A stretch of 64,000 nucleotides of DNA from Pecten maximus (GCF_902652985.1 NC_047016.1:23250001-23314000), one strand, 5' to 3'; positions 14,591-42,662 are shown, counted from the stretch's first letter. The notes: generated from the letters alone by a model not told the origin. Program-made: numbers and translations.

Positions 14591-19950
<5,360 letters not shown>

Positions 19951-21081
19951 ATTGCTGGAAAAAAAACCCAAATAAAACAAAAATTGTTAAATAAATATGC
20001 CAACAGGATCTTAAAAAGACTTAACCTCAAATTGTATTATGAATAAGCACAGTGATCAATGTTCATTAAAAAAAACCATGGTAGGCGATTTGCTTAAATA
20101 GGGGTACAAGATAATGAACGGGCACAGGCAAAACGTATATAAATATATTCGTGACATTTGTGATATTTCCTTCATTTTGGGTAATACCAGTATTATACCA
20201 CCATTTTAAACTAGGTTAAGAAACTTGAATTCACAACCAATTTGTACATTGTTCAACCAGAGGCAGATTTAAAATAAAACATGGACCCTGATTAAGGTGT
20301 TTGAACAATGAATTCTTCACGAGATATTGCAGGTCTACACAGGTTGTAGAAAACCACGAACTTGTAATACGCAAACTCGCCAGTTGGAGTATGGATTTTC
20401 ATTTACATTAAAGTCCACGATCTGTGGGTTTCACTGAAAGAACTAAGCATCATGTTTAAATAAACAAAAGTATCAGCAATGTTTGAATTACACAATACAT
20501 ATAAGTGTAAGTATGGGCTTCTTTTTATAGACCACCCTCTACGATGCGTAATTGAACCACATGACCAAGCCCGGATGCTAATAGAATTTGCTAGAAGCCG
20601 AGCAACATGTTCAAAGTCCATAGAAAACGAAAGCATATATTCTGTAAGTATTTATTACTTCGATCAGTTTCTTCTCAGGTGATGTAAAAACTTTCTTTTT
20701 TAAATACAATGAAACTAAGGAAAGACAGTTTTGTGTACCGCGTCTAGCCAAATACCTTAGATCTACTAGCGCACGTGGTGCGTGTTTGGTGGCAACATAC
20801 ATTGTATTTAAACCAAGACCTTACCTACAGACTTTCACTTTGACAAAGCACACTTCCAATCAGATTTGTAAACCAAAAACTACTCGTGAATTAAAAGTAT
20901 AAATTATTAACATCCCCATTTAACTTTTCGATAACGCTAGCTAGAACGACGAAAAATGCCGGCCATTGTCTGCACGAGGACTCCTCCCTACAATTTATTC
21001 CAACAAATTTTACAGAATCGCCCGAAAGTAATGGCCCATTAATCGAACACAGATGCGTCTCAAACCGTTCTATAAACTTAC

Positions 21082-21170
21082 CTGTTGTTTTTAGTGTTTT
21101 ACTTGAATATTAGAGCCAGATATTTCAATGTTCTTGTCTCAGCTAAAACCCCTCGCTCCGGTTAGTTCTT
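21082..21170 (-). other. HSPA8: Putative non-coding first exon of HSC70
   Basis: Consensus donor CAG|GTAAGT at 21082/21081, just downstream of the promoter elements; TSS position approximate. Confidence 0.65.
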
Positions 21171-21192
21171 GGTTCCCGGCGTTATGCGACCC

Positions 21193-21301
21193 GTATTTAA
21201 TGCACACCGGAGGATATGACGTCAAATCTAGAAAATTCCAGAAGACGAGTAATATCCACCAATCAGAGCAGAGAAAAGAGACACGTGACTAATATGCTAA
21301 T
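21193..21301 (-). promoter_or_regulatory. HSC70 promoter: TATA-like, CRE, heat-shock element, CCAAT, E-box
   Basis: TTAAATA (~21194-200), TGACGTCA (21217-24), HSE aGAAa-aTTCc-aGAAg (21230-44), CCAATC (21259-64), CACGTG (21282-87). Confidence 0.8.
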
Positions 21302-21839: not shown

Positions 21840-22053
21840 AAGAAATCGCGATTTTTCTGGAAATTTTGCCTGTTGACAACGTTTCCGTGTCACATGACGA
21901 TGAGTCGGACACCGTAGTCTGTATTATGTGTACTGTGTACGTTTGAAGGGAAGCTACTCCCACAATATTCAGTGACTTGACAACATGTAAACAAACAATG
22001 GTATCATAGGCACATGTGCACTGCAGATAGAGGATATCTGTCTGTAATATTAG
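21840..22053 (+). promoter_or_regulatory. Possible divergent promoter and non-coding exon for the plus-strand Hsp70 paralogue
   Basis: HSE-like tTTCt-gGAAa-tTTTg (21854-68), GTCACATGAC E-box palindrome (21889-98), strong donor AG|GTAAGG at 22053/54. Confidence 0.35.
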
Positions 22054-22297
22054 GTAAGGAAAATGAGGTATACAATAGCTATTTTCATTTCGAATGTTGA
22101 ACTCATGACACTGGCATCGCCAGCAAACACACCCATAACAATTATCACTAGATTATAGGCCTACTTCAGGCAGTAACATATATATCGTCCTTAATTTATT
22201 CAGATCGTGAATGTTCTCGAGTCGTTTCTCTTTCAATATTTTCCAACGTGTATACGTATACAATCGATATTGGAGGCCATCGAAATTCAGACGAGAC

Positions 22298-25382: not shown

Positions 25383-25620
25383 ATGCAAGAGAAAGCTCCG
25401 AGGCGAAAACCAGCCTCCCCCCGAATTATCGGACTGGACATAGGTGATACAACTTGTAGAGTAAGCACATGGTCATCTAAATCAGGAAAACCAGAAACTG
25501 TGGTGGACGAGTTGGGTAACAGATGTATACCATCTGCTGTGGCGGTTACTGACACAGGGGTGCTAGTGGGGCACGAAGCTCTTGGAATCCTGGCCAAAAA
25601 TCCTCACAACGTCTTTACAG
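25383..25620 (+). CDS. Hsp70 paralogue coding exon 1
   Basis: IIGLDIGDTT..DELGNRCIPSAVA; acceptor TTTCAG at 25357; phase-1 donor. Confidence 0.85.
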
Positions 25621-28600
25621 GTATAACTTAACACAAGTAAGATGTAAGTTCAGGTACCGTTTGAACTGATAACATAAGTTTCTTATTTAGTAGATAATCG
25701 CAAACACGAAATATGGATACTTGTTTCGACTTGTTTTTACTGTTACTACAGTTGCTATTATGAGAATAAGCTAAAACCTTGACAACAATTCGTTTCATAA
25801 GGAATCGAGCACGACGATTTAAATGCTGATGAAATAAAGAAATATAAGGGGAAATTAAGAAACAATTAGCATCATACCTTGGAATTAAGACACATATAGA
25901 GTCACAACCGGGAATAAAGGTGTCATTAGAGTCACACCTGGGAATAAAGGTGTCATTATAGTCACACCTGGGAATAAAGGTGTCATTAGAGTCAATACCC
26001 GGGAATAAAGGTGTCATTATAGTAATACCCGGGAATAAAGGTGTCATTATAGTCACACCCGGGAATAAAAGTGTCATTAGAGTAATACCCGGGAATAAAG
26101 TTGCCATTATAGTCACACCTGGGAATAAAGGTGTCATTATAGTCACACCCGGGAATAAAGGTGTCATTAGAGTAATACCCGGGAATAAAGGTGTCATTAG
26201 AGTAATACCCGGGAATAAAGGTGTCATTATAGTAATACCCGGGAATAAAGGTGTCATTATAGTCACACCCGGGAATAAAGGTGTCATTAGAGTAATACCC
26301 GGGAATAAAGGTGTCATTAGAGTAATACCCGGGAATAAAGGTGTCATTATAGTAATACCCGGGAATAAAGGTGTCATTAGTCATACCCGGGAATAAAGGT
26401 GTCATTATAGTCACACCCGGGAATAAAGGTGTCATTATAGTCACACCAGGGAATAAAGGTGTCATTAGAGTCACACCCGGGAATAAAGGTGTTATTAGAG
26501 TAATACCCGGGAATAAAGGTGTCATTATAGTAATACCCGGGAATAAAGGTGTCATTATAGTCACACCCGGGAATAAAGGTGTCATTAGAGTAATACCCGG
26601 GAATAAAGTTGCCATTATAGTCACACCCGGGAATAAAGGTGTCATTATAGTCACACCCGGAAATACAGGTGTTATTAGAGTCACACCCGGGAATAAAGGT
26701 GTCATTAGAGTCACACCCGGGAATAAAGGTGTCATTAGAGTCACAACCGGGAATAAAGGTGTCATTATAGTCACACCCGGGAAAAAAGGTGTCATTAGAG
26801 TAATACCCGGGAATAAAGGTGTCATTAGAGTAATACCCGGGATTCTACCATGTTTGCTATGCAACGCCAGTTTTGATTGGTTTAAAACCATGTATTATTT
26901 TCCAATTATACACGCTCGTGTCAATAATACACGTTTGTGAGTCACGGCTGTTACAATTTTATGTATCTAATATTCACCCGTTAATAATACTGTTACTTTA
27001 GCCGAGTGGGCTAATGGGTTAGTCTTTCTGTAACTTTTATCACGACGCGAGTTCGAATCCTACGAAGGCCGTTTTTTTGTTTTTTTCATCCCTTTTTTTT
27101 TTAAATTTCAAAATCAATGCCATATGATAGATGTTCTTGATCGTCGTACTGTAGTGCCTGTAAAGAAATGTATATTTCATCAACAAATAATGCAATACTC
27201 AAGAAATACGGGGTTTCTTTGCCGTTTTTCTATTAGACTTAGAGGTAGATCTCAAAATTAAACAGTACATGGTAGAATAGAAATAATCAACTTTGACTCG
27301 TGTATTGTTGCAGGATATACAACTCGGACTCGGATATTTTGCAATTTTAATTGATAACTCAGGCCTGCGGCCTTCGTTATTAATTTAATTGCAAAATATC
27401 CTCGTCCTCGTTGTATATTCTGCAACAATACACGAATCATCGTTAATTATTTCTTAAATAAAGGTGTCATTAGAGTAATACCCGGGACTAAATGTGTCAT
27501 TAGAGTAATACACGAGAGTTAAGGTGTCAGTAGAGTAATACACGAGAGTTAAGGTGTCAGTAGAGTAATACACGAGAATAAAGAATCCAAAAGAGTCATA
27601 CACTGAAATTAAGTTGCCAAAAAGTGATACCGGGGAATCAAGATGCCAATAGAGTGATACCGGGACTAAAACGTGCTAATAGAGTCATAACCGGGAATTA
27701 AGGTGTCAATAGAGTCATAACCGGGAATTAAGGTGTCAATAGAGTCATAACCGGGAATTAAGGTGTCAATAGAGTCATAACCGGGAATTAAGGTGTCAAT
27801 AGAGTCATAACCGGGAATTAAGGTGTCAATAGAATCATAACCGGGAATTAAGGTGTCAATAGAATCATAACCGGGAATTAAGGTGTCAATAGAATCATAA
27901 CCGGGAATTAAGGTGTCAATAGAGTCATAACCGGGAATTAAGGTGTCAATAGAGCGATACCCGGGAATTAAGGTGTCAATATAATCATAACCGGGAATTA
28001 AGGTGTCAATAGAGTCATAACCGGGAATTAAGGTGTCAATAGAGCGATACCCGGGAATTAAGGTGTCAATAGAGTCATAACCGGGAATTAAGGTGTCAAT
28101 AGAGTCATAACCGGGAATTAAGGTGTCAATAGAGTCATAACCGGGAATTAAGGTGTCAATAGAATCATATCCAGGAATTAAAGTGCGAACAGAGCAACAG
28201 AAACATCGACGTCGAAACAGAAGTGTTCATATATGATGTTTGTCACGGAAATTTCCAAATTGAGAGAAATATAAGGACTTGACATGAACTTTCAACCCAC
28301 GGTCTATATAATTACATGTGTTATATGTGGACCGTGGATTAGAAATTCGTGCCAAGTCCTGTTTAGCTGACGTATAAGTGTACATAATTTCATATGTTCA
28401 GGTATTATAGGCCTCTTGAAAGAAGATCCAGAAGAAAGACGACTTAAAGTGGAGGAAAATGGTAAAGATGTGACTTTCTCACCAAAGGATATTCTCACTC
28501 ATCTACTGGTTAAAGTGGCAGACATTGTCCATGAAAAATTTGGCAAAGTGAGTGACTTCCCCTTGAATACATCCCCATTAAATTATGTTTGATGATCTAA

Positions 28601-29690
28601 ATGGCACAGGCGCTAAGTCTTTAAAAAACTAAAGCGTGAAAGGAAATATAAATGTTGGTAGTATTTATACCGTTATTACTATGGTTGTTTTCGGCTTGTC
28701 ATTTTGACGGTATTATTATATTCTACTGTGACAGGACACTGTTGACACTGTAGTGGCCGTTCCTGTGGATTTGTCTGACGCTGGTCGACAGGCCGTCAAA
28801 GATGCGTGTAGTGATGTGGGTCTCAACATACTGAGGGTCATTAATGAAGCAACAAGTGCGTGTATTGCTCACGAACTTGATAATAAGGTAAATATTATAT
28901 TGGCAATTTTGAGTAACCCCTCCCCTGGAAGTTGCACCAATAGAACAAAGGGCAGACAGAGCAATGAGGAAAGAAAGGAAGGATTTAAGATCACAAGTGT
29001 TCCGTGTCTTCAATGACCCCTTAATAGAAGACACATAAAAAATCCCCGATTCATAAGTAGGCCCACTTTTAATTGCCTTTTACGACCAACATGTAACGTA
29101 ATGTAAACAACCCGGGTATTATGTAACATCCTTACTATACATTCAATGTAAACGACCCGGATATGATGTAACATCCTTACTATACATTCAATGTAAACGA
29201 CCCGGATATGATGTAACTATACATTCAATGTAAACGACCCGGATATGATGTAACAGCCTTACTATACATTCAATGTAAACGACCCGGATATGATGTAACA
29301 TCCTTACTATACATTCAATGTAAACGACCCGGATATGATGTAACATCCTTACTATACATTCAATGTAAACGACCCGGATATGATGTAACATCCTTACTAT
29401 GCATTCAATGTAAACGACCCGAGAAGGATGTAACAGCCTTACTATACATTTAATGTAAACGACCTGAGTATGATGTAACAGCCTTACTTCAATTCAATTC
29501 AATTCAATTTATTTCTCTTTAACCATACATAACAGTACAGAGAAAACATATTTACACAATACAAAAGTTATATACAGTTGTTCAGCCAGTGTATAAAGTA
29601 TGCACACGCAGACTGTATCAATTAGTTTATCAAAACATCTGATATTTAACCATATCGTTACGCATGATACCATTTTATATAATTTCAAAT

Positions 29691-29725
<35 letters not shown>

Positions 29726-32700
29726 TCAAGTCAAGATGAACATGATGTGTAACATCATGCTATGGAGGACACATTGCTAAAGATAATACTAATGAATTTA
29801 CAGAGTTTTTTCAATGTATTTACGTGGTTTGAGTTCATAAGATCTCTAAATTTTAATATGTTCGGCCTTGTATAATAATATTTATTTAGATATAATTTTC
29901 TATGCGCAGCTAATGACTGGCATTCTAGCAGATAATGGAATTCATCTCCTATTTGTTGACTATTACAAAAAGTACATATTCTTTCGTGGCGTTCAATATT
30001 ATTCCACCTTCCAGTTTCAATAATCAGTCTATGATTTGTAGTTCTGAACTTACAAAAAGTATTTCTTTCTTTATCTGTAAGAACGTCTAGATAGCATTCA
30101 AAACCAAATTTGTTTTTAAAAATTCTGTAACAACCAAACTTAGAAGAATTAAATACATCATTTTCCCACTGCTGTATAAACTGATCATGGAGTGTTTGTT
30201 TTACATATGACTTTATCCAAGAAGTATCTAATTCCTGGATATACTGGATATTCCACACATAGCTAATACCACATTCATCTAATAATTGTTGTATATAACG
30301 TATATAGGGAACATTATTATTACGGTATTGGTTTAGACATAACAGTTTATAAGTTATTACATTTAGTTTGTTTTCTTTTGAATTAATCAATTGAGACCAA
30401 TAGGTCAACATTCTCGTCTTAACTGAGATATTCAAAGGATAAGCTCCAAGTTCACCATAAACCATAGACGTTGGTGTACTTCGTTTGACCCCTAATAATA
30501 ACTTACAAAACTTTAAGTGCGCTCTCTCAATGACTTGTAGATTTGTAAAACCCCAAATCTCACATCCGTATAACAATATAGGTTTTACAATTTTATCATA
30601 CAGATCATATATACACTGAACAGATAAGTTATATAACCTTCCTTTCTTTAAAACATCATACATAGCAATTGTTGCTTTTTTAACATTGTAATTTTTAGCT
30701 TCATTAAAAGAACCTGTGCGTGAAAAAACAGTGCCCAGGTATGAAAAACTTTGGACAATTTCTATGTCTTCAGTATCAAATTTGAATTGTAATCTGTTAT
30801 TTAGACGACCTTTACTGAATATCATACATTTTGTTTTCTCACTGTTAACTTTCAGTCTCCATATTTTACAATATTCACTAAAAACATTTAGCTGCATTTG
30901 CAGGTCTTCTGGGGTGTCAGAAAATAAGATTGTATCGTCAGCATACAACAAAATAAATAGTTTAATATACATATGTAAATCAACTTCAAGTTGGTTTGTC
31001 AGGCACTGTAAACCGGTAACATTATTTCTAGTCATAAACTCCTCAAGGTCATTCAAATATAAACTAAATAAAAAAGGAGACAAGTTTTCCCCTTGCCTCA
31101 ATCCATTATTGCATGCGAAGAATGCAGAATTCTGACCATTAAATGATATGTTAGATTTAATACCTTGATACATATTGTAAATAATTGTATACATTTTGCC
31201 ATTTATATGATTTAACAACATTTTGTTCCACAGACCATTTCTCCAAACTTTGTCAAAGGCCTTTTCAAAATCAATGAAAATACAGTACAGCTTCTTTTTC
31301 ATCATATTAGTAAGACTAATTAGGGAATACAGCACAAAAATATTATCTATAGTTGAATACTTCTTGCGAAATCCAGCTTGGTTTTCACATATTAGATTAA
31401 CTTCGTCGGAATACTTTAATAGTCTTGCATTTAAAATACTTGTGAATAGTTTGCCGATGCAACTTACAATAGTAATCGGCCTATAATTTTTAGGGTCTGA
31501 GGGAGAACCCTTATTTTTATAAATAGGTACAATAGAGCCTCGAAGCCAGCTTTCAGGGATTTTCCCTGTGCTAAAAATAACATCAAATAATATAACATAG
31601 AGATCAATCATTTTAGAGGACGAATATTTAATATATTCATTAATGATGAGATCATCCGAGCAAGCCTTATTGTTTTTCAGTAGCTTAATAGCATGTTCCA
31701 CCTCCTCTCTGGTTATATTACTATTTAATACATTATTTACAGGACCCATATCAATATCATTATTATCAAACATGTTATCATCTACTCCAACATTTAAGGT
31801 TTTAAAGAAATTAAAAAGCGTGTCAATCGATATGTTACCTTTTTTGTTTTTATGTGTACTATTAGAACTTTTAAGTAGTTTCCAGTAATCCCGTGCATTA
31901 CTACTTTTCATATCTTTCAACTTACGACGGAGGTCTCTTCTGAATTTATTAATACTTTTATCCATTGTATGTTTGTAAGATTTTTCTGATTCTTTATATT
32001 TATTGAAGAAATAATCATTTTTGTGACGTCTGTACATACCTTTATGGCGTCGGAATAACTTCCTGGCCGCCTTACATTCACCGTCAAACCAGGGTTTAGA
32101 ATTTGATTTTGGCTTTTTACATATATTAGTATGGTTATATTTGTATATACCAAAAGTTGACTTAGCAGCACTTACAAGCACATCACTGCAGTCTGCCATA
32201 AGTGTATTGACATCTAGGTCGTTCGTATTACTGCATTGGTTAATTGTATCAATAATATTCTGAATTTTGTCATCGTTTATATTCTCAATAAAATGTTGGA
32301 TTTTCTCAGTCTCCCAGTTTTTAATACGTTCAGTATAATCTGTTGTATCATGTGTATTAATGTTATCATTGGTAACTGTATTGGCCATACCACCTATAGT
32401 AAGAGTTAGGGGACAATGTGCATCTGACATAAGAGGGCTAAAATCTAAAACATCAAAGTCACGTATGCGTTTTAGGAGCTCAGAGGAACATATGACATAA
32501 TCGACAACGCTAGAACTTTTACAGGTGCACTTACCTATATCTCTATCACGACCAACTCTACCATTACAGATAAAAATGTCATTATATTTACAAAAATCCA
32601 ATAGTCGATTCCCAAAATTATTTTTGTGTAAGTCCTGACTTTTTCTGTTCTTAGCAAAACCGGAATTTTCAAATACATTCATGTATGTAGCTTCATTTAG

Positions 32701-35700
32701 GATTTCAGTTGTTAATTGATCTCTATCGTCTATTTCATTGTAATCAATAAAATCTACAGAGCTCGCAGTTCTTGCATTAAAATCTCCTAACAAACACACA
32801 TTTTTGTAATTAGCTGATAACCTCAAGTATTCAGTTTCAATTTCCAAATATGGATCACCAATACAGTATGTAGAATTCTCGGGTGGGACATAAACCATTC
32901 CAAATAAAAAATCATCATCACTTTGTAACTTCGCGCCATCTAACCTAAACCAGCTTACGTATTGACTATCACTTTGTACTTCATAGACATAATCTTCCAA
33001 GTCATATTTATATGCTATAACTATACCACCCGACTTCACTTTTTTAAACTTTGCCCTATTTTTCATTACAGTTTTAAAACATGGCAAATCAATGACATCT
33101 AAATCATCAGTTTTGGATTCACAGAGACATAAAATATCAAAACTATTTACAAATTCACGAAACTCAGGATATTGAGCTTTTCTCACTAAGCCACAAACAT
33201 TTAACGACAGTATTTGTATTGTACATGCATTATAGTTACTTTTTCCACCACCACCATATGTATTAATCGGCTCGTTTGAAACCAAACTAGTGTCTATATT
33301 TTGCCCTCCGGCGCGTCCCTATTCGTGCTGATTTGAAATCACCCGTCTACGTTTCGAGCGCGGTTGTTGAGTGGGCGTATGCTGACTGGCCATGGGCTGA
33401 ACATCCGGGCCCTTATATAGTACACCATCTATGTACAGCTGATCTCTGTTCAACACAGTTTTTTTCCCGTTTTTCCTAGCTTCTTTCGCTACCGGATATA
33501 AAATTTTCCTTTTGTCTTCAATTTTCTTTGGAAACTGTTCGTTTATACCAAAATGTGACCCTTTTAGTTCTTTAGCACTCCGCTTGACTCTCAGTAAATC
33601 CTTGTAGTAAATAAACTTTGCTATGATTGATCTTGGCCGTGTACCGGTACGCCTGTCGCGTTGGCCGATTCTATGGACGTTGGCCATAGCAATGTCATGG
33701 GCGTTTACAATTTTGAGTTTACTTTCAATGAAATTTTTCAATGTTATTTCATCATCATCTAGACTCTGATTTTGGTCCCAAATTTTCTCTGGAATACCTG
33801 AAAATATCAGATTATACTTCATGCTCCTGCACTGTGCATCAGTAGCCCTATCTTTCATTTCCTCTATCATTTCGTGCAATTCATCAACTTCATCTAGGAC
33901 TTCATTTTCATTTTTTTCCAATTTGTCAATGCTTTTCTTCATGTTTGTAACGTTTCTGCCGACTGTATCATTTGCAGCCTTTACCCGATCCATGATATCA
34001 CTGTTACCCTGTATGTCACTTTCCATGTCCCTTATCTTATTTTTCATACAACTGATATCTGTTTCTGATCTTTCTACCCTCACAGTTAGGTTGCTGAGTT
34101 TTGTGTTAATCTCCTCGAGAGTGCTGGTATTTTCCTCAATTTTAGACAGTCTTGATTTCACTTCAGTAAACATTTCAAAAATAGAATTGATCGTGTTTTT
34201 CATTGTTGTGGTTTCAGTACTGACATCAGTTTCACTAAATAATGTTTCCCTACACTCTGCTAAAACTTTGGATGTAGACATACCTGTATTGTCCAGTGCA
34301 GCCATATTGGTGAGTTCAAGTCCTCAGAGTAAGATTTTCAAATCACAACAAAAGTTCATTTTCCCGGATAATTCCCGAATTTTTCCAGAATAATACCGAA
34401 CAGGATGCTAATCCAGCACTTACACAGCATTTTCAACAGTTTATAATGTTAATGACCCTACATTTTAGATAAAAACCAGCAAATTTCCTCTCCCAGATTT
34501 TTCATGTGTGTAGACACCTGGCTGAACACTACTCATGTCCTGAGTATGATGTAACAGCCTTACTATACGTTTAATGTAAACGACCTGAGTATGATGTAAC
34601 AGCCTTACTATACATTCAATGTAAACGACCCGGATATGATGTAACAGCCTTACTATACATTTAATGTAAACGACCTGAGTATGATGTAACATCCTTACTA
34701 TACATTCAATGTAAACGACCCGGATATGATGTAACAGCCTTACTATGCATTCAATGTAAACGACCCGAGTATGATGTAACATCCTTACTATACATTCAAT
34801 GTAAACGACCCGGATATGATGTAACATCCTTACTATACATGCAATGTAAATAACCCGGATATGATGTAACAGCCTTACTATACATTCAATGTAAACGACC
34901 CAGATATGATGTAACAGCCTTACTATACATTCAATGTAAACGACCCGGATATGATGTAACAGCCTTATTATACATTCAATGTAAACGACCTGGGTATGAT
35001 GTAACAGCCTTACTATACATTCAATGTAAACGACCCGGATATGATGTAACATCCTTAATATACATTCAATGTAAACGACCTGGGTATGATGTAACAGCCT
35101 TACTATACATTCAATGTAAACGACCTGAGTATGATGTAACATCCCTACTATACATTCAATGTAAACGACCCGGGTATGATGTAACAGCCTTACTATACAT
35201 TCAATGTAAACGACCCGGATATGATGTAACAGCCTTATTATACATTCAATGTAAACGACCTGGGTATGATGTAACAGCCTTACTATACATTCAATGTAAA
35301 CGACCCGGATATGATGTAACATCCTTAATATACATTCAATGTAAACGACCTGGGTATGATGTAACAGCCTTACTATACATTCAATGTAAACGACCTGAGT
35401 ATGATGTAACATCCCTACTATACATTCAATGTAAACGACCCGGGTATGATGTAACAGCCTTACTATACATTCAATGTAAACGACCCGGATATGATGTAAC
35501 AGCCCTACTATACATGCAATGTAAATAACCCGGATATGATGTAACAGCCTTACTATACATTCAATGTAAACGACCCAGATATGATGTAACAGCCTTACTA
35601 TACATTCAATGTAAACGACCCAGATATGATGTAACAGCCTTACTATACATTCAATGTAAACGACCCGGATATGATGTAACAGCCTTACTATACATGTTAA

Positions 35701-38700
35701 CGGCCCGGACATGTTTTTAACATTTATATGTAAAAAGTATTACATGGTTACCATTCATAAACACGATGCTTACATTTAGCCCAAAAGTTGTCTGGATGTT
35801 GCTCTCAAGTTATATAAATAGATTTTAAGTAATAAAGAGTGATCACGTACGGATTCAAGACATAACACTTGTTTAAATACAGTTTCCAGATAAAGAGATC
35901 CACGCGTTGGTAATTGACATGGGCGGAAGTACCTTCAATCTTACTATTCTACTCATTGAAGATGGAATATACGAAGTAGTCCATACAGCTGCGCATTCAG
36001 ATGTTTCCGGAAATAAATTTGACGAACGTTTGGCAGATTTTCTTATCAACGCACACGACAAGAAAAACAAGACTAACCTGCGGGATGATGCAAGAATCAT
36101 GCAACGCATGCGCACTGCATGCTGTAAGGCAAAAGAATGTCTTTCGTCGTCTTCATATACGAACATACTTATCGAAAACTTGCAAAATGACAAAGATTAC
36201 AAAACCAGCGTAACAAAACCAAAATTTGAAGAGTTGAATATGGACCTTTTCCACAATGCTGTTAAACTGGTCGATGGATCATTGAAGAATTCACACTTGA
36301 GTGAAGAAGATATTTATGTGGTGGTGATGGTTGGAGGCTCAACGAAAATACCAAAGTTAGTGGAAATGATGACCGACAGATTCCAAGGACGTGTGTTAGC
36401 GAGTAGCATTGACCCAGAGGATGTTGTTTCATTTGGCTGTGGTACGTGTCAGTTAGTCATCTTTAAAATAAAATAATTGCAAGTTTCAAAAGTTTTCAAC
36501 CAGATAGACCAAGCTACCGGTCAGCGTTTTGCTGCCTGTGAACTGATTTGTTCTTATTTTATATGAAGCTCATTATATTGAAGAGCTTATCAGAACAGGT
36601 AACAGATACATTGAAAAGCCCTTCAATTTCACCTATAATTATATTGACGATGGGCTATCTTTAGATAACAAAAACTATTGACCATGTCGACCGGATAAAC
36701 CCTGTAGAACTTCAATCCAAGGGCACTCCCGACTCCAACATCAGCAGCTTATCTCGAATTTTACTTACAACAGCATAAGTAACATAGGCATCTTACAGAT
36801 AAGCTGTATCATCAGCCTGATGATTTAAATTTTAAAATGAATATTTTCCATTTCTAGACAGTAACATCCCTACTTCCCATACCTACGGTGTTTACATGTC
36901 CTAGTTGATTCAATATATATAGGCTTGTTCCCATTATTACAATTTCCGTGACAGATGTCATCTACTACGAAGAGTAACAACACAGGGTTAGAAATACAGC
37001 TTGATGAAGACAAAGGGAAATATTTATGGTTGATATCATGATTTTATTTGTAAATATTATATTATCCTTACGCGATAAGAAGTCTGCCGTGTTTGGCGAT
37101 TATTGATATCCCTAATAATTTAATATTGTTACTTAACCCGGATTTGAACTTGACCTGTACTATTATGGCGGGTGTAGTCGATGAAGCAGAAGACGCTTAC
37201 TCTTCCGTAGTGCGCGGTCTTATTCTCCTTGTACTTTTTAAGGAGTCATCTCACAAATCTACATTTTTGTTCATATTTTGCATTCGTTTAATCTTTTTTG
37301 AGTTTGAATAATGTTTTTTTATTAAGTCGGATTTCTTTGTTTTATGAGTTGATCCGATAGTAAGGGGTGTAAGTGTGAATGCATCTAAACTCAAACGCTT
37401 TATTTTACATGTATCTTTGATAGTTGATTCCCATGTCATATATCATCGTGTTATTTCTTTGGACAGTTATGCAGGCGATGGTGCTGGCAGGAAATGTTTG
37501 TCCTGGACAGTTGACCGACCTCCTCTTGCTTGACGTAGAACCCTTGTCATTAGGTTTGGAAACTGCAGAAAATGTCATGACGGTTATGATACCTCGAAAC
37601 GCAACAGTGCCTTGTAAAAAATGTATGACATTTACAACTTATCATGACAACCAGGTCACAATGCTGTTCCGGTTGTTTGAAGGCGAACGATGTTTCGCCA
37701 CTGATAACAACGACCTCGGTATGTTTGAAATGACTGGGATTTGGGCTGAGCCTCAAGGTCGGGCACGGATCGACGTTACGTTCGATATTGATGCAAATGG
37801 CGTACTTACTATAACGACAGTAAACAGGTTTTCCAGGAAGACGCAGTCGTTTTCTTTGACGAATTTCAAATGTAAGTTTCATATTGTTATCTGGGCCTCA
37901 ATTTTATCATGCTATTCGGTTATTTTGTTTGTATCTATTTTAAAATATCAAGCATTTAATGTAGCTTTAGTTCTGTGTAAAGTTACACATTCCAGGTTTA
38001 TGTTATCTTATATCACATTGTTACATTATTTCATACAACATTGTAACATTAGTTTTATACCACTTTCTAACATTATCTTATACCACATCGTTGTATTATT
38101 TGTTTTTAATGTCTTTTTTTTTTTAACATAATTTTAGACATTATTGTTACATTTTTTCATACATCATTGTTATTTTAGTTTTAAATCACGTTGTTGCTTT
38201 AGTTTTTTATCACATTGTTACATTATCTTTTACCACATTGTTGCATTATTTGTTTTTAAAAGTCATCTTTTTACACAATTTCATACATCATTGTTACAAT
38301 ACTTAACGCAACATTTTTATCAGTTTTGAAGTCATTTGCATATACAGTATATGGTGGTACATTTGTAGAATACATATACAGTATATGGTGGTACATTTGT
38401 AGAATATATATACCGTATATGGTGGTACGTTTGTAGAATACATATACAGTATATGTTGGTACATTTGTAGAATACATATACAGTATATGGTGGTATGTTT
38501 GTAGAATACATATACAGTAAATGGTCGTACATTTGTATAATACATGGTGGTACATTTATAGAAAACATATACAGTATATGGTGGTACATTTGTAGAATAT
38601 ATATACCGTATATGGTGGTACGTTTGTAGAATACAAATACAGTATATGGTGGTACATTTGTAGAATACATATACAGTATATGGTGGTATGTTTGTAGAAT

Positions 38701-40489
38701 ACATATACAGTATATGGTGATACGTTTGTAGAATACATATACAGTATATGGTGGTACATTTGTAGAATACATATACAGTATATGGTGGTACGTTTGTAGA
38801 ATACATATACAGTAAATGGTCGTACATTTGTATAATACATGGTGGTACATTTGTAGAATACATATACAGTATATGGTGGTATATCTATATAATACATATA
38901 CAGTATATGGTGGTACATTTGTAGAATACATATACAGTATATGGTGGTACATTTGTAGAATATATATACAGTATATGGTCGTACATTTGTATAATACATG
39001 GTGGTACATTTTTAGAATACATATACAGTATATGGTGGTACATTTGTAGAATACATATAGAGTATATGGTGGTACATTTGTAAAATACATATACAGTTAA
39101 TGGTGGTACATTTGTAGAATACATACATGTATACAGCATATGGTGGTACATTGGTAGAAGACATATACATATACAGTATATGGTGGTACATTTGTAGAAT
39201 ACATATACAGTATATGGTAGTACATTTGTAGAATACATAAACAGTATATGGTGGTACATTTGTAGAATACATATACAGTATATGATAATTTTCATTATAG
39301 AACACAAAACAGTGTCAAATGGTACAGTATAGATGCATTTCAAGAAGTAGTGGATTGTAAGTTAAACTATAGAACTACTAATAAGTTATGATATAGTAGA
39401 CAATTATTGGTATAAGCTGACGATACTGCAATGATATGTTACAGGAAGGTGATTTTTAATATAAATAGTGACGAACAAGAGAAAAGTCAGCAATATTACA
39501 GAAGATTGATATTGTGGAGATTCATCTCCCTTTGACTTACACCCTATATTTTCTGCGTATAATTAAATCTATCACATGGAGCTCTACCATTGAATTAATT
39601 TATAACATGTAAATGTCAAGTAATGGATGAAAAAGGATTCGTTTTTTTTCTTTTAGTTGTTTTAAACCACATTCTTACGTTATTTTAAACCACATTCTTA
39701 CATTATTGTATACCACAGTTTTACATTTTTTTGCCACATATGTACATTATTTTATACCACATATGTACATTATTTTATACCACATATGTACATTATTTTA
39801 TACCACATATGTACATTATTATAAACCATATTTCTTACGTAGTTTATCTCCGCCCGTTTGGTTAAATCAAACTGTAAATTGTCGGATGGTTTTTCCTTTA
39901 GAGTTTGAAAATTCTATATTCACAAGGTCAAATTAATAGTTTGATAAAGCATTGCTTTATATTTATAGCTTATTACGACATGGATGAGCTCGAGGACATC
40001 ATTGAAACTGCAAACGATACACGAGAAAGTGATGAAAAGAAGATGTTAGTGCTAACGTCAAAACTGCTTCTATTAAGCTTCATAACCAACTTGGAGTCGG
40101 CTATGGAGGAGAGGGAAACGGATATAAATATTGATGTGAAAGAAACAGTAACGAAAAAATGTAGAGAAGTGAGAGACTGGATGGCAAATCAAGAATCTGT
40201 CGAACAAAGCATGTATGAAGAAAAGTTGTCCCTACTAGAGAATGAGATCTGTAGCCATAGAAACCTTAACCGTGACATAGTAACGCAGTGTAGAAATCAT
40301 CCGTTACACTTTATCAGTGGTCGAACTGTTAATAATGGCGCTACAAAATCCCAGGGGCTAGCCAAGGGGTGGGGCAAGGGGAGGGTCAAGGGGAGGACGA
40401 GGGGAAACGCCTCATCTACACCTGTCGTCAGTGTGCCCTCCACTCGGCCTGTTCCAGCCGTGGAGTTCCCAATAGAGGAGGTGGATTAA
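25383..40489 (+). CDS. Divergent cytosolic Hsp70 paralogue, 673 aa, 6 coding exons
   Basis: Exons 25383-25620, 28402-28547, 28735-28887, 35883-36441, 37467-37871, 39969-40489; all GT-AG, 2022 nt in frame. Motifs GLDIGDTT, INEATS, IDMGGSTFN, VMVGGSTKIP, DLLLLDV, FEGER, FDIDANG, IEEVD*. Confidence 0.88.
25897..28190. repeat. 30-bp tandem array (CCCGGGAATAAAGGTGTCATTAGAGTAATA and variant), split by an insert at 26843-27457
   Basis: Directly visible tandem units. Confidence 0.95.
26843..27457. mobile_element. Interspersed element with internal inverted repeats and a tRNA-like box (possibly Crypton-like non-autonomous)
   Basis: IR ATTCTACCATGT/ACATGGTAGAAT; long hairpin 27298-27435; TAGCCGAGTGG...GAGTTCGAATCC A/B-box-like at ~26999-27060; ends TATTTCTTAA. 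Confidence 0.55.
28402..28547 (+). CDS. Hsp70 paralogue coding exon 2
   Basis: ..LKVEENGKDVTFSPKDIL..KFGK; CAG acceptor, GTGAGT donor; not in the supplied ORF track. Confidence 0.8.
28735..28887 (+). CDS. Hsp70 paralogue coding exon 3
   Basis: VVAVPVDLSDAGRQAVKDA..LRVINEATSAC; 153 nt, as in HSC70. Confidence 0.88.
28915..29095 (-). mobile_element. Degraded SINE fragment (Meta/MESC-like central motif)
   Basis: TTAATTGCCTTTTACGACCAACATG resembles the reverse complement of the CATG..GTCGTAAGAGGCGACTAA motif. Confidence 0.35.
29755..33318 (-). CDS. LINE ORF2: APE endonuclease, reverse transcriptase, C-terminal CCHC-like domain
   Basis: LSLNVCGL, LCES, GDFNA, DY, SDAH (APE); NYRPITI, QAGFR, FIDFEKAFD, GLRQGENLSP, LLYADD, YLG (RT); CTFC..GDEFHYLLEC. 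Frame open from the ORF1 stop. Confidence 0.95.
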   Translation of the reverse strand, partial: GRAGGQNIDTSLVSNEPINTYGGGGKSNYNACTIQILSLNVCGLVRKAQYPEFREFVNSFDILCLCESKTDDLDVIDLPCFKTVMKNRAKFKKVKSGGIVIAYKYDLEDYVYEVQSDSQYVSWFRLDGAKLQSDDDFLFGMVYVPPENSTYCIGDPYLEIETEYLRLSANYKNVCLLGDFNARTASSVDFIDYNEIDDRDQLTTEILNEATYMNVFENSGFAKNRKSQDLHKNNFGNRLLDFCKYNDIFICNGRVGRDRDIGKCTCKSSSVVDYVICSSELLKRIRDFDVLDFSPLMSDAHCPLTLTIGGMANTVTNDNINTHDTTDYTERIKNWETEKIQHFIENINDDKIQNIIDTINQCSNTNDLDVNTLMADCSDVLVSAAKSTFGIYKYNHTNICKKPKSNSKPWFDGECKAARKLFRRHKGMYRRHKNDYFFNKYKESEKSYKHTMDKSINKFRRDLRRKLKDMKSSNARDYWKLLKSSNSTHKNKKGNISIDTLFNFFKTLNVGVDDNMFDNNDIDMGPVNNVLNSNITREEVEHAIKLLKNNKACSDDLIINEYIKYSSSKMIDLYVILFDVIFSTGKIPESWLRGSIVPIYKNKGSPSDPKNYRPITIVSCIGKLFTSILNARLLKYSDEVNLICENQAGFRKKYSTIDNIFVLYSLISLTNMMKKKLYCIFIDFEKAFDKVWRNGLWNKMLLNHINGKMYTIIYNMYQGIKSNISFNGQNSAFFACNNGLRQGENLSPFLFSLYLNDLEEFMTRNNVTGLQCLTNQLEVDLHMYIKLFILLYADDTILFSDTPEDLQMQLNVFSEYCKIWRLKVNSEKTKCMIFSKGRLNNRLQFKFDTEDIEIVQSFSYLGTVFSRTGSFNEAKNYNVKKATIAMYDVLKKGRLYNLSVQCIYDLYDKIVKPILLYGCEIWGFTNLQVIERAHLKFCKLLLGVKRSTPTSMVYGELGAYPLNISVKTRMLTYWSQLINSKENKLNVITYKLLCLNQYRNNNVPYIRYIQQLLDECGISYVWNIQYIQELDTSWIKSYVKQTLHDQFIQQWENDVFNSSKFGCYRIFKNKFGFECYLDVLTDKERNTFCKFRTTNHRLIIETGRWNNIERHERICTFCNSQQIGDEFHYLLECQSLAAHRKLYLNKYYYTRPNILKFRDLMNSNHVNTLKKLCKFISIIFSNVSSIA
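33319..34305 (-). CDS. LINE ORF1 (coiled coil plus L1-ORF1p-like RRM/CTD), 328 aa
   Basis: Heptad-rich N-terminal half; NLIFSGIPE, VHRIG, PRSIIAKF, INEQFP, LYIDG motifs; basic C-terminal RSKRRR. Confidence 0.9.
   Translation of the reverse strand: MAALDNTGMSTSKVLAECRETLFSETDVSTETTTMKNTINSIFEMFTEVKSRLSKIEENTSTLEEINTKLSNLTVRVERSETDISCMKNKIRDMESDIQGNSDIMDRVKAANDTVGRNVTNMKKSIDKLEKNENEVLDEVDELHEMIEEMKDRATDAQCRSMKYNLIFSGIPEKIWDQNQSLDDDEITLKNFIESKLKIVNAHDIAMANVHRIGQRDRRTGTRPRSIIAKFIYYKDLLRVKRSAKELKGSHFGINEQFPKKIEDKRKILYPVAKEARKNGKKTVLNRDQLYIDGVLYKGPDVQPMASQHTPTQQPRSKRRRVISNQHE
35883..36441 (+). CDS. Hsp70 paralogue coding exon 4
   Basis: IDMGGSTFN...VMVGGSTKIP...IDPEDVVSFGC; 559 nt. Confidence 0.9.
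36600..37300 (+). mobile_element. Degraded Penelope-like element RT C-terminal fragment
   Basis: Frameshifted KLY..DD.NF / FPFLDSNIPTS..YGVY.S motif followed by a GGCGGGTGT..GACGCTTACTCTTCC tail motif. Confidence 0.55.
37467..37871 (+). CDS. Hsp70 paralogue coding exon 5 (linker plus SBD-beta)
   Basis: DLLLLDVEPLSLGLETA...FDIDANG; 405 nt. Confidence 0.9.
38339..39283. repeat. 34-bp tandem array (TATACAGTATATGGTGGTACATTTGTAGAATACA)
   Basis: Visible tandem units in the last intron of the paralogue. Confidence 0.95.
39660..39840. repeat. ~24-bp minisatellite (TTATACCACATATGTACATTATTT)
   Basis: About 7 degenerate units. Confidence 0.75.
39969..40489 (+). CDS. Hsp70 paralogue terminal exon (lid plus IEEVD)
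   Basis: ..KKCREVRDWM..LENEIC..FPIEEVD*; TAG acceptor at 39968. Confidence 0.85.
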
Positions 40490-41115: not shown

Positions 41116-42662
41116 GTATGTTACTGTACGTAACAGTATCTTAGTGTCCACAGAATTATGGGGACTATATGGTATGTTACTGTACGTTACAGTATCTTAG
41201 TGTCCAACAGAATTACGGGGACTATATGGTATGTTACTGTACGTTACAGTATCTTAGTGTCCAACAGAATTACGGGGACTATATGGTATGTTACTGTACT
41301 TTACAGTATCTAAGTGTCCAACAGAATTACGGGGACTATATGGTATGTTACTGTACGTTACAGTATCTTAGTGTCCAACAGAATTACGGGGACTATATGG
41401 TATGTTACTGTACGTTACAGTATCTTAGTGTCCAACAGAATTACGGGGACTATATGGTATGTTACTGTACTTTACAGTATCTAAGTGTCCAACAGAATTA
41501 CGGGGACTATATGGTATGTTACTGTACTTTACAGTATCTTAGTGTCCAACAGAATTATGGGGACTATATGGTATGTTACTGTACTTTACAGTATCTTAGT
41601 GTCCGACAGAATTATGGGGACTATATGGTATGTTACTATACTTTACAGTATCTAAGTGTCCGACAGAATTATGGGGACTATATGGTATGTTACTGTACTT
41701 TACAGTATCTTAGTGTCCAACAGAATTACGGGGACTATATGGTATGTTACTATACTTTACAGTATCTAAGTGTCCGACAGAATTACGGGGACTATATGGT
41801 ATGTTACTGTACTTTACAGTATCTTAGTGTCCGACAGAATTACGGGGACTATATGGTATGTTACTGTACTTTACAGTATCTTAGTGTCCGACAGAATTAT
41901 GGGGACTATATGGTATGTTACTGTACTTTACAGTATCTTAGTGTCCGACAGAATTATGGGGACTATATGGTATGTTACTGTACTTTACAGTATCCTAGTG
42001 TCCGACAGAGCTACGGGGACTATATGGTATGTTACTGTACTTTACAGTATCTTAGTGTCCAACAGAATTACAGGGACTATATGGTATGTTACTGTACTTT
42101 ACAGTATCTTAGTGTCCAACGGAATTATGGGGACTATATGGTATGTTACTGTACTTTACAGTGTCGTAGTGTCCAACAGAATTACGGGGACTATATGGTA
42201 TGTTACTGTACTTTACAGTGTCGTAGTGTCCAACAGAATTATGGGGACTATATGGTATGTTACTGTACTTTACAGTATCTTAGTGTCCGACAGAATTACG
42301 GGGACTATATGGTATGTTACTGTACTTTACAGTATCTTAGTGTCCAACAGAATTATGGGGACTATATGGTATGTTACTGTACTTTACAGTATCTTAGTGT
42401 CCAACAAAATTACGGGGACTATATGGTATGTTACTGTACTTTACAGTGTCGTAGTGTCCAACAGAATTACGGGGACTATATGGTATGTTACTGTACTTTA
42501 CAGTGTCGTAGTGTCCAACAGAATTACGGGGACTATATGGTATGTTACTATACTTTACAGTATCTAAGTGTCCGACAGAATTACGGGGACTATATGGTAT
42601 GTTACTATACTTTACAGTATCTAAGTGTCCGACAGAATTACGGGGACTATATGGTATGTTAC
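41116..42662. repeat. 57-bp tandem array
   Basis: GGTATGTTACTGTACTTTACAGTATCTTAGTGTCCAACAGAATTACGGGGACTATAT, about 27 units. Confidence 0.97.

What the first reader, a model, noticed from the sequence alone, without database searches (positions are those of the whole stretch)
25383..40489. Intact but apparently ATPase-impaired Hsp70 paralogue that keeps the linker and EEVD, head-to-head with HSC70
Seen: six exons splice in frame to 673 aa with the same intron positions and phases as the neighbouring HSC70 (238/146/153/559/405/521 vs 214/206/153/556/402/443 nt), so it is an inverted local duplicate. Aligned on HSC70 numbering: GTTY->GDTT (T13D), DAKRL->GIIGL (K71 lost, with a ~20-aa deletion in that exon), PAYF->[10 protein letters not shown]->GGSTFN (D206N), GGED->SGNK, CERAKR->CCKAKE. 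D10, E175, D199, T204, the DLLLLDV linker and the terminal IEEVD are kept. Known: K71 is required for Hsp70 ATP hydrolysis, T13 for allosteric coupling, and EEVD binds TPR co-chaperones (HOP, CHIP). Inference: a selectively maintained pseudo-ATPase Hsp70 (holdase, co-chaperone decoy or Hsp110-like regulator) paired with its parent.
Basis: partly seen in the sequence, partly recalled or inferred. Interest (0 to 1): 0.8.

Follow-up and report, generated by a model that had tools for sequence, protein, structure and literature searches.

The report
Scallop Hsp70 paralogue with degenerate ATPase
Beside the ordinary HSC70 chaperone gene of the king scallop sits an intact, fast-evolved copy, conserved in other scallops, that has lost key ATP-handling residues but keeps its client-binding domain and co-chaperone docking tail. 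It probably acts as an ATP-independent helper or regulator of the chaperone network, which nobody has yet tested.

Summary
Six GT-AG exons (25383-40489, +) give a 673-aa open frame with the same five intron positions and phases as the HSC70 gene lying head-to-head upstream. The window is Pecten maximus, and the model is identical to RefSeq XP_033731888.1 ("heat shock 70 kDa protein-like"), an automatic, uncharacterised annotation.

- **Orthologues:** intact six-exon orthologues exist in Argopecten irradians and Ylistrum balloti, and a partial one in an unidentified species.
- **Synteny:** the position next to HSC70 or its promoter is conserved in all three named genera.
- **Selection:** pairwise dN/dS is 0.17-0.20, with pN well below pS in every exon, so it is not a pseudogene.
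- **Divergence:** it is only about 40% identical to HSC70.
- **ATP site:** K71, T13, Y15, D206, E231/D232, E268 and R272 are replaced in every orthologue seen. E175 and T204, kept in Pecten, vary among orthologues.
- **Conserved parts:** the DLLLLDV linker, the SBD-beta and a terminal I-[E/D]-E-[V/L]-D are conserved.
- **Pattern of loss:** the loss is NBD-wide, not confined to the ATP site.

ATPase loss and a holdase or decoy role remain inference. I found no expression or biochemical data. I rate it a new variant of a known kind, of moderate interest.

The parts
25383..25620 (+). Paralogue exon 1 (ATG; NBD phosphate-1 loop reads GLDIGDTTC; 8 extra N-terminal codons; ends in phase 1)
   Evidence: (PF00012 E=6e-10)
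28402..28547 (+). Paralogue exon 2 (K71 region reads G-IIGLLKED; 20 codons shorter than HSC70 exon 2)
   Evidence: no Pfam hit when scanned alone
28735..28887 (+). Paralogue exon 3 (VPVDLSD in place of VPAYFND; N174 and E175 present in Pecten)
35883..36441 (+). Paralogue exon 4 (NBD lobe II: DMGGSTFN, SGNKFD, CCKAKECLSS, GGSTKIP)
   Evidence: (E=2e-46)
37467..37871 (+). Paralogue exon 5 (DLLLLDV linker plus SBD-beta; the most constrained exon)
   Evidence: (E=6.5e-35)
39969..40489 (+). Paralogue exon 6 (helical lid, a basic Gly/Lys/Arg-rich tail predicted to be disordered, terminal IEEVD, TAA stop)
14591..19950 (-). Canonical HSC70 gene, the presumed parent. Six coding exons: 19950-19737, 19384-19179, 18968-18816, 18442-17887, 17659-17258, 15033-14591. 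All catalytic motifs are intact.
20895..21287 (-). HSC70 core promoter (E-box, CCAAT, HSE at 21231-21243, CRE, TATA-like) and non-coding exon 1. The block is conserved in three scallop genera and lies between the two genes.

Best explanation
This is a scallop-lineage paralogue of cytosolic HSC70, made by an old DNA-level inverted duplication next to the parent gene. After a burst of divergence it has been held under purifying selection.

Shown here:
- the ORF and splice sites are intact;
- orthologues are intact in Argopecten and Ylistrum, with a partial one in a fourth species;
- the position beside HSC70 or its promoter is conserved;
- dN/dS is about 0.2;
- the Hsp70 fold is retained in the prediction;
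- K71, T13, Y15, D206, E231/D232, E268 and R272 are replaced in every orthologue, and E175, G203 and T204 are free to vary;
- the DLLLLDV linker is conserved, SBD-beta is the most constrained part, and the terminal I-[E/D]-E-[V/L]-D is conserved.

Inferred:
- the NBD no longer runs the ATP hydrolysis cycle and probably binds nucleotide poorly;
- the protein would therefore sit in a nucleotide-independent state, binding clients through its SBD without ATP-driven release;
- it would still dock TPR co-chaperones (CHIP, HOP) and class-B J-proteins through its C-terminus;
- it would then act as a holdase or triage adaptor, or as a competitor for HSC70's co-chaperones, much like a natural counterpart of the engineered dominant-negative K71 mutants.
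For: - **Gene model:** the six exons and their phases are verified. The model equals RefSeq XP_033731888.1 (P0151), checked against the window exon by exon.
- **Open frame is not chance:** 0 stops in frame against 42 and 56 in the other frames, P about 1e-19.
- **Orthologues:** A. irradians P0152 and Y. balloti P0156 have the same six exons. Partial exons 3-5 come from Logan contigs L001 and L005.
- **Selection:** exon-by-exon pooled NG86 gives omega 0.18 (Pm-Ai), 0.20 (Pm-Yb) and 0.17 (Ai-Yb). Against the fourth species omega is at most about 0.1, with saturated dS. Every exon has pN well below pS. For comparison, HSC70 Pm-Ai has omega 0.069 and dN five times lower.
- **Synteny:** in A. irradians HSC70 lies head-to-head 5.3 kb away. 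In Y. balloti the contig starts inside the conserved HSC70 promoter block, 1.7 kb from the paralogue's ATG.
- **Residues:** see the site table and alignment.
- **Domain contrast:** of columns invariant in at least 35 of 36 canonical cytosolic Hsp70s, the paralogues keep 33% in the NBD and 60% in the linker plus SBD-beta.
- **Fold:** AF2 gives NBD pLDDT 80-95 and a disordered tail over residues 612-673. The best Foldseek hit is bovine Hsc70 1-554.
[quoted passage not shown] P5 Ile, P3 Glu and P1 Asp are invariant in the three orthologues.
- **Established knowledge (from memory):** K71 is essential for Hsc70 ATP hydrolysis (O'Brien, Flaherty and McKay 1996). T13 couples ATP binding to the conformational change (Sousa and McKay 1998).
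Against: - I obtained no transcript or protein evidence. That RefSeq's two isoforms imply RNA-seq support is my inference.
- There is no biochemistry.
- The NBD is still under purifying selection (pN about 0.15-0.25 against pS about 0.45-0.70).
- Twelve of 25 ATP-site positions survive: D10, G12, T14, P147, D199, G201, G202, D234, K271, S275, G339 and S340. Modified nucleotide binding therefore cannot be excluded.
- Loss is no more frequent at ATP-site positions than elsewhere in the NBD (Fisher p = 0.12). The ATP site was not singled out.
- An invariant Lys at HSC70 position 75 (Pecten K86) lies four positions, about one helical turn, after the K71 slot. The alignment there is ambiguous, and I could not inspect the model's coordinates.
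- The second tandem copy in A. irradians carries a nonsense codon, so the gene can be lost when redundant.
Confidence: 0.7

Rival explanations
1. It is a decaying pseudogene copy of HSC70 that happens still to be open.
For: It is only about 40% identical to its neighbour, and catalytic residues are lost. Its introns are bloated with a LINE and minisatellites. One of the two A. irradians copies has a premature stop.
Against: There are no stops in 670 codons (P about 1e-19) and all ten splice sites are canonical. Intact orthologues exist in three genera with omega 0.17-0.20 and synonymous sites at or near saturation. The SBD-beta, the linker and the C-terminal motif are strongly conserved.
Confidence: 0.03
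2. It is still a working, nucleotide-cycling Hsp70 that uses a rewired active site, for example the invariant Lys at position 75 or other compensating residues. On this reading it is simply a fast-evolving specialised chaperone.
For: The NBD is under purifying selection. D10, D199, G201-G202, K271, S275 and G338-S340 are kept in all orthologues. K at HSC70 position 75 is invariant. The linker and R171/N174, which serve J-domain and allosteric contacts, are kept. The NBD fold is predicted with confidence.
Against: K71, T13, D206, E268 and R272 are replaced together in every orthologue. The residues that contact the gamma-phosphate or Mg (positions 13, 71, 175, 204, 206) differ between orthologues: D/D/N, I/T/R, E/Q/E/A, T/T/S/S and N/K/K/S. 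A rewired but functional catalytic centre would be expected to keep them fixed.
Confidence: 0.13
3. It is a dedicated partner of HSC70, working either as an Hsp110-like nucleotide-exchange factor or as an Ssz1/HSPA14-like non-hydrolysing subunit of a complex, rather than as a client holdase or decoy.
For: It has stayed next to HSC70 throughout scallop divergence. Atypical Hsp70s that do not need hydrolysis are known to act this way (established knowledge of Sse1/Hsp110 and Ssz1).
Against: Hsp110 exchange activity needs an ATP-bound NBD, and here the adenosine and phosphate contacts are lost. Relative to HSC70 there is no Hsp110-type insertion in the SBD or lid exons. The only length differences are N-terminal, a 20-aa deletion in exon 2, and the tail. 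Unlike Ssz1/HSPA14 it keeps a full SBD, the lid and an EEVD-like end. The BAG/NEF-contact residues E283 and D285 are changed (one search list).
Confidence: 0.1

Closest known systems
HSPA8 / HSC70 (canonical cytosolic Hsp70), here the adjacent gene at 14591-19950 (-)
   Same: Same six-exon structure and intron phases. Same domain order: NBD, DLLLLDV linker, SBD-beta, helical lid, disordered tail, I-E-E-V-D end. HSC70-type proteins are the best PDB and Foldseek matches.
   Different: About 40% identity. PF00012 scores 436 bits against 876 for oyster HSC71. K71, T13, Y15, D206, E231/D232, E268 and R272 are replaced. There is a 20-aa deletion in subdomain IB. The GGMP-type tail is replaced by a basic Gly/Lys/Arg-rich tail. 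dN is five times higher.
Engineered ATPase-dead Hsc70/Hsp70 mutants (K71 substitutions, T13 mutants) used as dominant negatives
   Same: The catalytic Lys and the coupling Thr are missing from an otherwise complete Hsp70 that still has an SBD and an EEVD end. This is the basis of the proposed mode of action.
   Different: This is a natural, conserved gene with many further NBD changes, not a point mutant. No dominant-negative behaviour has been tested.
Ssz1 (yeast) / HSPA14 (animals), atypical Hsp70 of the ribosome-associated complex
   Same: A member of the Hsp70 superfamily whose function does not depend on ATP hydrolysis.
   Different: Ssz1/HSPA14 are ancient, widely conserved, have a shortened SBD and no EEVD. 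They are not HSC70-adjacent lineage-specific duplicates. N. subnodosus has a separate HSPA14 (PMC11750468).
Hsp110 / Sse1 (HSPH)
   Same: A relative of Hsp70 that regulates Hsp70 rather than folding clients by cycling.
   Different: Hsp110 has long insertions and an extended C-terminus, needs bound ATP, and lacks EEVD. None of these applies here.
HSPA12-type expansions of bivalves
   Same: A lineage-specific expansion of Hsp70-superfamily genes in bivalves (PMC11268181 and PMC10939072, listed).
   Different: HSPA12 proteins have an atypical NBD and no canonical SBD, lid or EEVD. This protein's nearest relatives are HSC70/HSP70 of any eukaryote at 37-40% identity.

Membership tests
Hsp70 family (Pfam PF00012) | Significant full-length match to the HSP70 profile | tested here: met
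   P0151 scores 436 bits (E=2e-130) over profile positions 1-588 of 599. Exons 1, 3, 4 and 5 each match on their own.
Hsp70 family (Pfam PF00012) | Two-domain architecture: actin-like NBD, hydrophobic linker, beta-sandwich SBD, helical lid | tested here: met
   The AF2 secondary-structure order and confidence fit. The Foldseek top hits are two-domain Hsc70, BiP and DnaK. DLLLLDV is invariant.
Canonical cytosolic HSC70/HSP70 (HSPA8/HSPA1 type) | Catalytic and coupling residues K71, T13, E175, D206 and T204 conserved | tested here: not met
   K71 is I/T/R, T13 is D/D/N and D206 is N/K/K/S. E175 is E/Q/E (A in the fourth species) and T204 is T/T/S/S.
Canonical cytosolic HSC70/HSP70 (HSPA8/HSPA1 type) | Hsp70 signature 1 (IDLGTTYS, as quoted in PMC11750468) | tested here: not met
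   The paralogue reads LDIGDTTC, LDIGDTNC and LDIGNTNC in the three species.
Canonical cytosolic HSC70/HSP70 (HSPA8/HSPA1 type) | Adenosine-pocket residues E268, K271, R272 and S275 | tested here: not met
   E268 is C/C/C/S and R272 is E in all. K271 and S275 are kept.
Canonical cytosolic HSC70/HSP70 (HSPA8/HSPA1 type) | C-terminal EEVD co-chaperone motif | tested here: met
   IEEVD in Pecten, IDEVD in Argopecten and IDELD in Ylistrum. P5 Ile, P3 Glu and P1 Asp are invariant. Actual binding was not tested.
Canonical cytosolic HSC70/HSP70 (HSPA8/HSPA1 type) | ATP hydrolysis stimulated by J-proteins | not testable with these tools
   Needs recombinant protein.
Hsp110 (HSPH) | Large insertion in the SBD, extended C-terminus, no EEVD, ATP-bound NBD | tested here: not met
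   The protein is 673 aa. Exon 5 aligns to HSC70 with a single 1-residue gap. It ends in EEVD, and the nucleotide contacts are lost.
Ssz1 / HSPA14 | Truncated SBD, no EEVD, ancient orthologue group | tested here: not met
   The SBD-beta and lid are complete and the end is EEVD-like. Relatives above 40% identity were found only in scallops.
Pseudogene | Stops, frameshifts or broken splice sites, or dN/dS near 1 | tested here: not met
   The only exception is the redundant copy b in A. irradians, which has one nonsense codon.

The most novel reading that the evidence does not exclude
Scallops have carried, since before the Pecten/Argopecten/Ylistrum split, a natural EEVD-bearing Hsp70 pseudo-ATPase beside HSC70. 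It would work as a built-in dominant-negative-like regulator. It would trap clients without ATP-driven release and compete with HSC70 for CHIP, HOP and class-B J-proteins, so setting the balance between folding and degradation. As far as I know this would be the first natural Hsp70 of this kind.
Probability: 0.3. Interest if true: 0.7.

Novelty: new variant of a known kind. Interest (0 to 1): 0.5.

Why it matters
Hsp70 function is normally inseparable from its ATPase cycle. The known exceptions (Hsp110, Ssz1/HSPA14, HSPA12, HSPA13) have all lost or changed the canonical SBD, lid and EEVD module.

This protein does the opposite. It has lost the catalytic Lys, the coupling Thr and the adenosine contacts, while keeping the linker, the SBD and the co-chaperone docking motif under purifying selection. 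That makes it a natural experiment on what an Hsp70 can do without cycling.

It could also show how co-chaperone competition at the EEVD motif is tuned in vivo. Bivalves are models for stress tolerance with large Hsp70 expansions, and a conserved non-cycling member placed beside the housekeeping HSC70 is a concrete, testable candidate regulator.

If the protein instead proves to be an active ATPase, it would show that K71 is dispensable in a natural Hsp70, which would be at least as interesting.

Tried and rejected
- **Phylogenetic placement.** The three paralogues form a 100%-supported clade on an extreme stem branch, about 10 changes per column under the mixture model. The clade falls near the base, a long-branch artefact. 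The tree says nothing about origin. The AU test only shows that a sister position to oyster HSC71 is not rejected (p = 0.244).
- **Word search with a three-species alignment of exon 6.** No hit. This says nothing about proteins outside the 0.55-1.75 length window.
- **Word search with exon 4.** It found only one Logan fragment. This is why the big search was used, since the question of selection needed orthologues.
- **Species of Logan runs SRR26445941 and SRR27895284.** Not identifiable. A literature search for the accessions found nothing.
- **Exact look-up of isoform X2, P0002.** Not on record, so its alternative first exon could not be located.
- **Literature.** No paper describes this gene. 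The 'HSPA2' with EEVD in Nodipecten is a 47-aa fragment 70% identical to human, so it is not this paralogue.
- **Heat-shock elements.** None lies within 2 kb upstream of the paralogue's ATG in Pecten or Argopecten. The only window HSE near the locus belongs to the HSC70 promoter.
- **ATP-site enrichment.** The idea that loss is focused on the ATP site was tested and not supported.
- **Joined models.** Full-length work used the database entry P0151 that one search returned, checked against the window exon by exon. The window's own HSC70 was used only exon by exon, so it is absent from the tree and the full-length alignments, where oyster HSC71 (P0163) stands in. In one search the letters of the six exons were pooled only to count base composition.
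- **Human sequence.** No contig that I took for human was met.
Full report
**1. The observation**

The region holds six exons on the + strand: 25383-25620, 28402-28547, 28735-28887, 35883-36441, 37467-37871 and 39969-40489. Their lengths are 238/146/153/559/405/521 nt. All introns are GT-AG, the phases are 1,0,0,1,1, and the three split codons read G, V and S. The sum is 2022 nt, or 673 codons plus TAA.

The frame has no stop. The other two frames of the same exons hold 42 and 56 stops. From base composition, an open frame of 670 codons has a probability of about 1e-19.

HSC70 lies head-to-head upstream on the minus strand, with its ATG at 19950. Its coding exons are 214/206/153/556/402/443 nt with the same phases. 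Aligned exon by exon, the two genes match end to end, so all five intron positions coincide. Exon 2 of the paralogue is 20 codons shorter, and overall identity is 40%.

Pfam HSP70 matches exons 1, 3, 4 and 5 individually. Exon 4 aligns without gaps to bovine HSC70 residues 192-372. Its best PDB sequence hit is an Hsc70 point mutant that, like the paralogue, reads GGGTFN at position 206.

**2. What it is and where it comes from**

I searched the spliced model exon by exon, by reference, and did not join the window's exons for any search.

- The word search with exon 4 found a single 179-aa Logan fragment, 59% identical. It comes from a 2.2-kb genomic contig carrying exons 3-5 with the same boundaries and short introns. 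A second run of the same unidentified species gives the same protein.
- That tool cannot see full-length relatives of a single exon, and the claim turns on whether orthologues exist. I therefore used the one big search with exon 4.
- The top hit is 100% identical. The cluster look-up names it: Pecten maximus XP_033731890.1 (isoform X2, 546 aa) and XP_033731888.1 (isoform X1, 673 aa, P0151), 'heat shock 70 kDa protein-like'.
- P0151 maps onto the six window exons residue for residue. The window corresponds to chromosome record LR736839.1, with the gene at 23265383-23300489.

So the gene model is already in RefSeq as an automatic, uncharacterised annotation. From here on I used P0151, a database entry returned by a tool, for full-length work.

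**3. Orthologues and synteny**

- The word search with P0151 found Ylistrum balloti LOC132546059 (P0156, 664 aa, 66% identical over the full length). It also found the Argopecten irradians cluster (P0152, 663 aa, 69%).
- Everything else is canonical Hsp70 from any eukaryote at 37-40% identity. The clade is therefore scallop-specific as far as these collections show.
- Both orthologues have the same six exons.
- In A. irradians a canonical HSC70 lies head-to-head 5.3 kb upstream, against 5.4 kb in Pecten. The whole [HSC70(-), paralogue(+)] module is duplicated in tandem.
- In Y. balloti the contig begins 1.96 kb upstream of the gene. Its first 286 nt match a block conserved in all three genera at 76-78% identity (window 20895-21287).
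- Read on the HSC70 strand, that block contains an E-box, a CCAAT box, an HSE, a CRE, a TATA-like box and a non-coding exon ending CAACAG|GTAA. It is the HSC70 promoter.

The pairing with HSC70 therefore predates the split of the three genera.

**4. Selection**

I computed Nei-Gojobori counts exon by exon on in-frame codons and pooled them, with no joined sequence.

| Comparison | dN | dS | omega |
|---|---|---|---|
| Paralogue, Pecten-Argopecten | 0.195 | 1.09 | 0.18 |
| Paralogue, Pecten-Ylistrum | – | – | 0.20 |
| Paralogue, Argopecten-Ylistrum | – | – | 0.17 |
| Paralogue, Pecten vs the fourth species | pN 0.21 | pS 0.73, saturated | at most ~0.1 |
| HSC70, Pecten-Argopecten (94% aa identity) | 0.039 | 0.57 | 0.069 |

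- Every exon has pN well below pS. Exon 5 (linker plus SBD-beta) is the most constrained, with pN 0.10-0.13.
- The paralogue changes about five times faster than its parent but is clearly under purifying selection.
- One qualification: the second tandem copy in A. irradians has a single in-frame TAA in exon 4 and is otherwise open. Between the two copies pN/pS is 0.41. That fits recent redundancy.

**5. The ATP site**

Positions use HSC70 numbering, checked on a coelacanth HSC71 whose NBD numbering matches D10, K71, E175, D199 and D206. The order of residues is Pecten / Argopecten / Ylistrum / fourth species, where the last is available.

| Position | Residues in the orthologues |
|---|---|
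| T13 | D/D/N |
| Y15 | T/N/N |
| K71 | I/T/R |
| Y149 | D/S/W |
| E175 | E/Q/E, and A in the fourth species |
| G203 | S/K/S/S |
| T204 | T/T/S/S |
| D206 | N/K/K/S |
| E231-D232 | NK/SR/NK/NK |
| E268 | C/C/C/S |
| R272 | E in all |
| R342 | K in all |
| D366 | E/E/E/D |

Kept in all orthologues: D10, G12, T14, P147, R155, K159, R171, N174, D199, G201, G202, D234, K271, S275 and G338-S340.

- The residues that touch the gamma-phosphate and metal are not just replaced. They differ between orthologues, which is what loss of constraint on catalysis predicts.
- The loss is not focused on the pocket, however. Of 225 NBD columns invariant in at least 35 of 36 canonical cytosolic Hsp70s, only 33% are kept in all three paralogues.
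- ATP-site positions fare no worse: 12 of 25 kept, Fisher p = 0.12. In the linker plus SBD-beta, 60% are kept. Domain limits in that call are approximate, because the reference has a 6-residue insertion after about residue 373.
- The K71 neighbourhood aligns ambiguously, either as a 3-residue deletion or as K71 aligned to I/T/R. An invariant Lys sits at HSC70 position 75. I could not inspect coordinates, so this caveat stands.

**6. What is kept**

- DLLLLDV is invariant. The SBD-beta keeps the ETA...FTTY core, with hydrophobic replacements in the pocket strand. My assignment of pocket and arch residues is from memory.
- AlphaFold2, run on an alignment of 39 sequences, predicts a confident NBD (pLDDT 80-95). 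The SBD-beta is less confident (55-70) and the helical lid scores 75-86. The tail from residue 612 is disordered.
- The best structural matches are two-domain bovine Hsc70 and other Hsp70s.
- In place of HSC70's Gly/Met/Pro repeats the tail is basic and rich in Gly, Lys and Arg. It has conserved islands (CRN..L.FISGR, GW, STRP.PAV.F) and ends IEEVD / IDEVD / IDELD.
[quoted passage not shown] P5 Ile, P3 Glu and P1 Asp are invariant here.

**7. Most likely mechanism**

Shown: this is a conserved, selected, HSC70-derived protein. Its catalytic centre is degenerate, and its client-binding and co-chaperone-docking parts are preserved.

Inferred: it does not cycle on ATP. It would bind clients without ATP-driven release while still engaging TPR and class-B J co-chaperones. 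It would thus act as a holdase or triage adaptor, or as a competitor for HSC70's partners, by analogy with engineered K71 mutants.

Rivals:
- a rewired but active ATPase (0.13);
- an Hsp110- or Ssz1-like partner of HSC70 (0.10);
- a pseudogene (0.03).

**8. Origin**

Identical exon structure, adjacency and inverted orientation point to a DNA-level local duplication of an HSC70-type gene. The tree cannot confirm this. The clade sits on an extreme branch and is drawn to the base. A sister position to oyster HSC71 is not rejected (p = 0.244).

No HSE lies within 2 kb of the paralogue's ATG in Pecten or Argopecten. A polypyrimidine-AG 25 nt upstream of the Pecten ATG hints at a 5'-UTR intron, but I could not find the first exon.

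**9. Comparison, novelty and verdict**

It is a member of the Hsp70 family, scoring 436 bits on PF00012 against 876 for oyster HSC71. It fails the defining catalytic features of canonical HSC70/HSP70, and it does not fit Hsp110, Ssz1/HSPA14 or HSPA12.

I found no paper that describes it. I rate it a new variant of a known kind: an atypical Hsp70 that has lost the ATPase signature while keeping the linker, SBD and EEVD.

Interest is moderate (0.5). The gene is real, conserved and testable. Its function rests on sequence inference, and atypical non-hydrolysing Hsp70s are already a known theme.

Noticed in passing
window 7234-12404 and 12402-17574: A direct tandem duplication of 5.17 kb at 99.9% identity. 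It repeats HSC70 exon 6 (second copy at 9865-9423) and the last 315 nt of exon 5 (12403-12089). The collection lists two 657-aa HSC70 models here. I did not decide whether it is a real recent duplication or an assembly artefact.
   Followed up: partly
window 29755-34305 (-), within intron 3 of the paralogue: An apparently intact non-LTR retrotransposon. ORF2 is 1176 aa with endonuclease and reverse-transcriptase domains, and ORF1 is a 328-aa coiled-coil protein. It is inserted into a 45-nt minisatellite that now flanks it on both sides, at 29100-29488 and 34544-35695.
   Followed up: partly
window 20895-21287 (-); L002 6275-6667; L003 1-286: The HSC70 core promoter and non-coding exon 1 are conserved at 76-78% identity in Pecten, Argopecten and Ylistrum. 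The block holds an E-box, a CCAAT box, an HSE (21231-21243), a CRE, a TATA-like box and the exon-1 donor CAACAG|GTAA. In Ylistrum it lies only 1.7 kb from the paralogue's ATG, so shared or bidirectional regulation is possible.
   Followed up: partly
L002 and L004 (Argopecten irradians CM084267.1, about 24.34-24.39 Mb): The [HSC70(-), paralogue(+)] module is tandemly duplicated. Paralogue copy b (L004 7299-12460) has one in-frame TAA in exon 4 and is annotated as two separate genes of 234 aa and 413 aa. It is otherwise open. Between copies a and b, pS is 0.062 and pN 0.025.
   Followed up: yes
window 25897-28185, 38339-39284, 41116-42662, 43468-63998: Minisatellite and satellite arrays fill introns 1 and 5 of the paralogue and nearly all of the last 20 kb of the window. 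Units are 30, 34, 57, 30, 17/34 (9.4 kb), 37, 44 and 27 nt. They account for the long repetitive 'ORFs' and the strong GC skew at 46-55 kb.
   Followed up: no
window 22207-23746 (+): Retrotransposon remnants in the spacer between the two genes. One 243-aa ORF carries a zf-RVT domain.
   Followed up: no
window 21946-21995; L002 8908-8957: A 50-nt block 82% identical between Pecten and Argopecten in the intergenic spacer. It lies 3.4 kb and 1.05 kb upstream of the paralogue's ATG respectively. It is unexplained and could be a regulatory element, a 5' exon or a shared repeat.
   Followed up: partly
window 40300-40486 (paralogue tail): The disordered C-terminal tail has swapped HSC70's Gly/Met/Pro repeats for a basic Gly/Lys/Arg-rich stretch. 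It has islands conserved across three genera (FISGR, GW, STRP.PAV.F). These suggest a binding function of their own, such as nucleic-acid binding or nuclear import, which was not tested.
   Followed up: no
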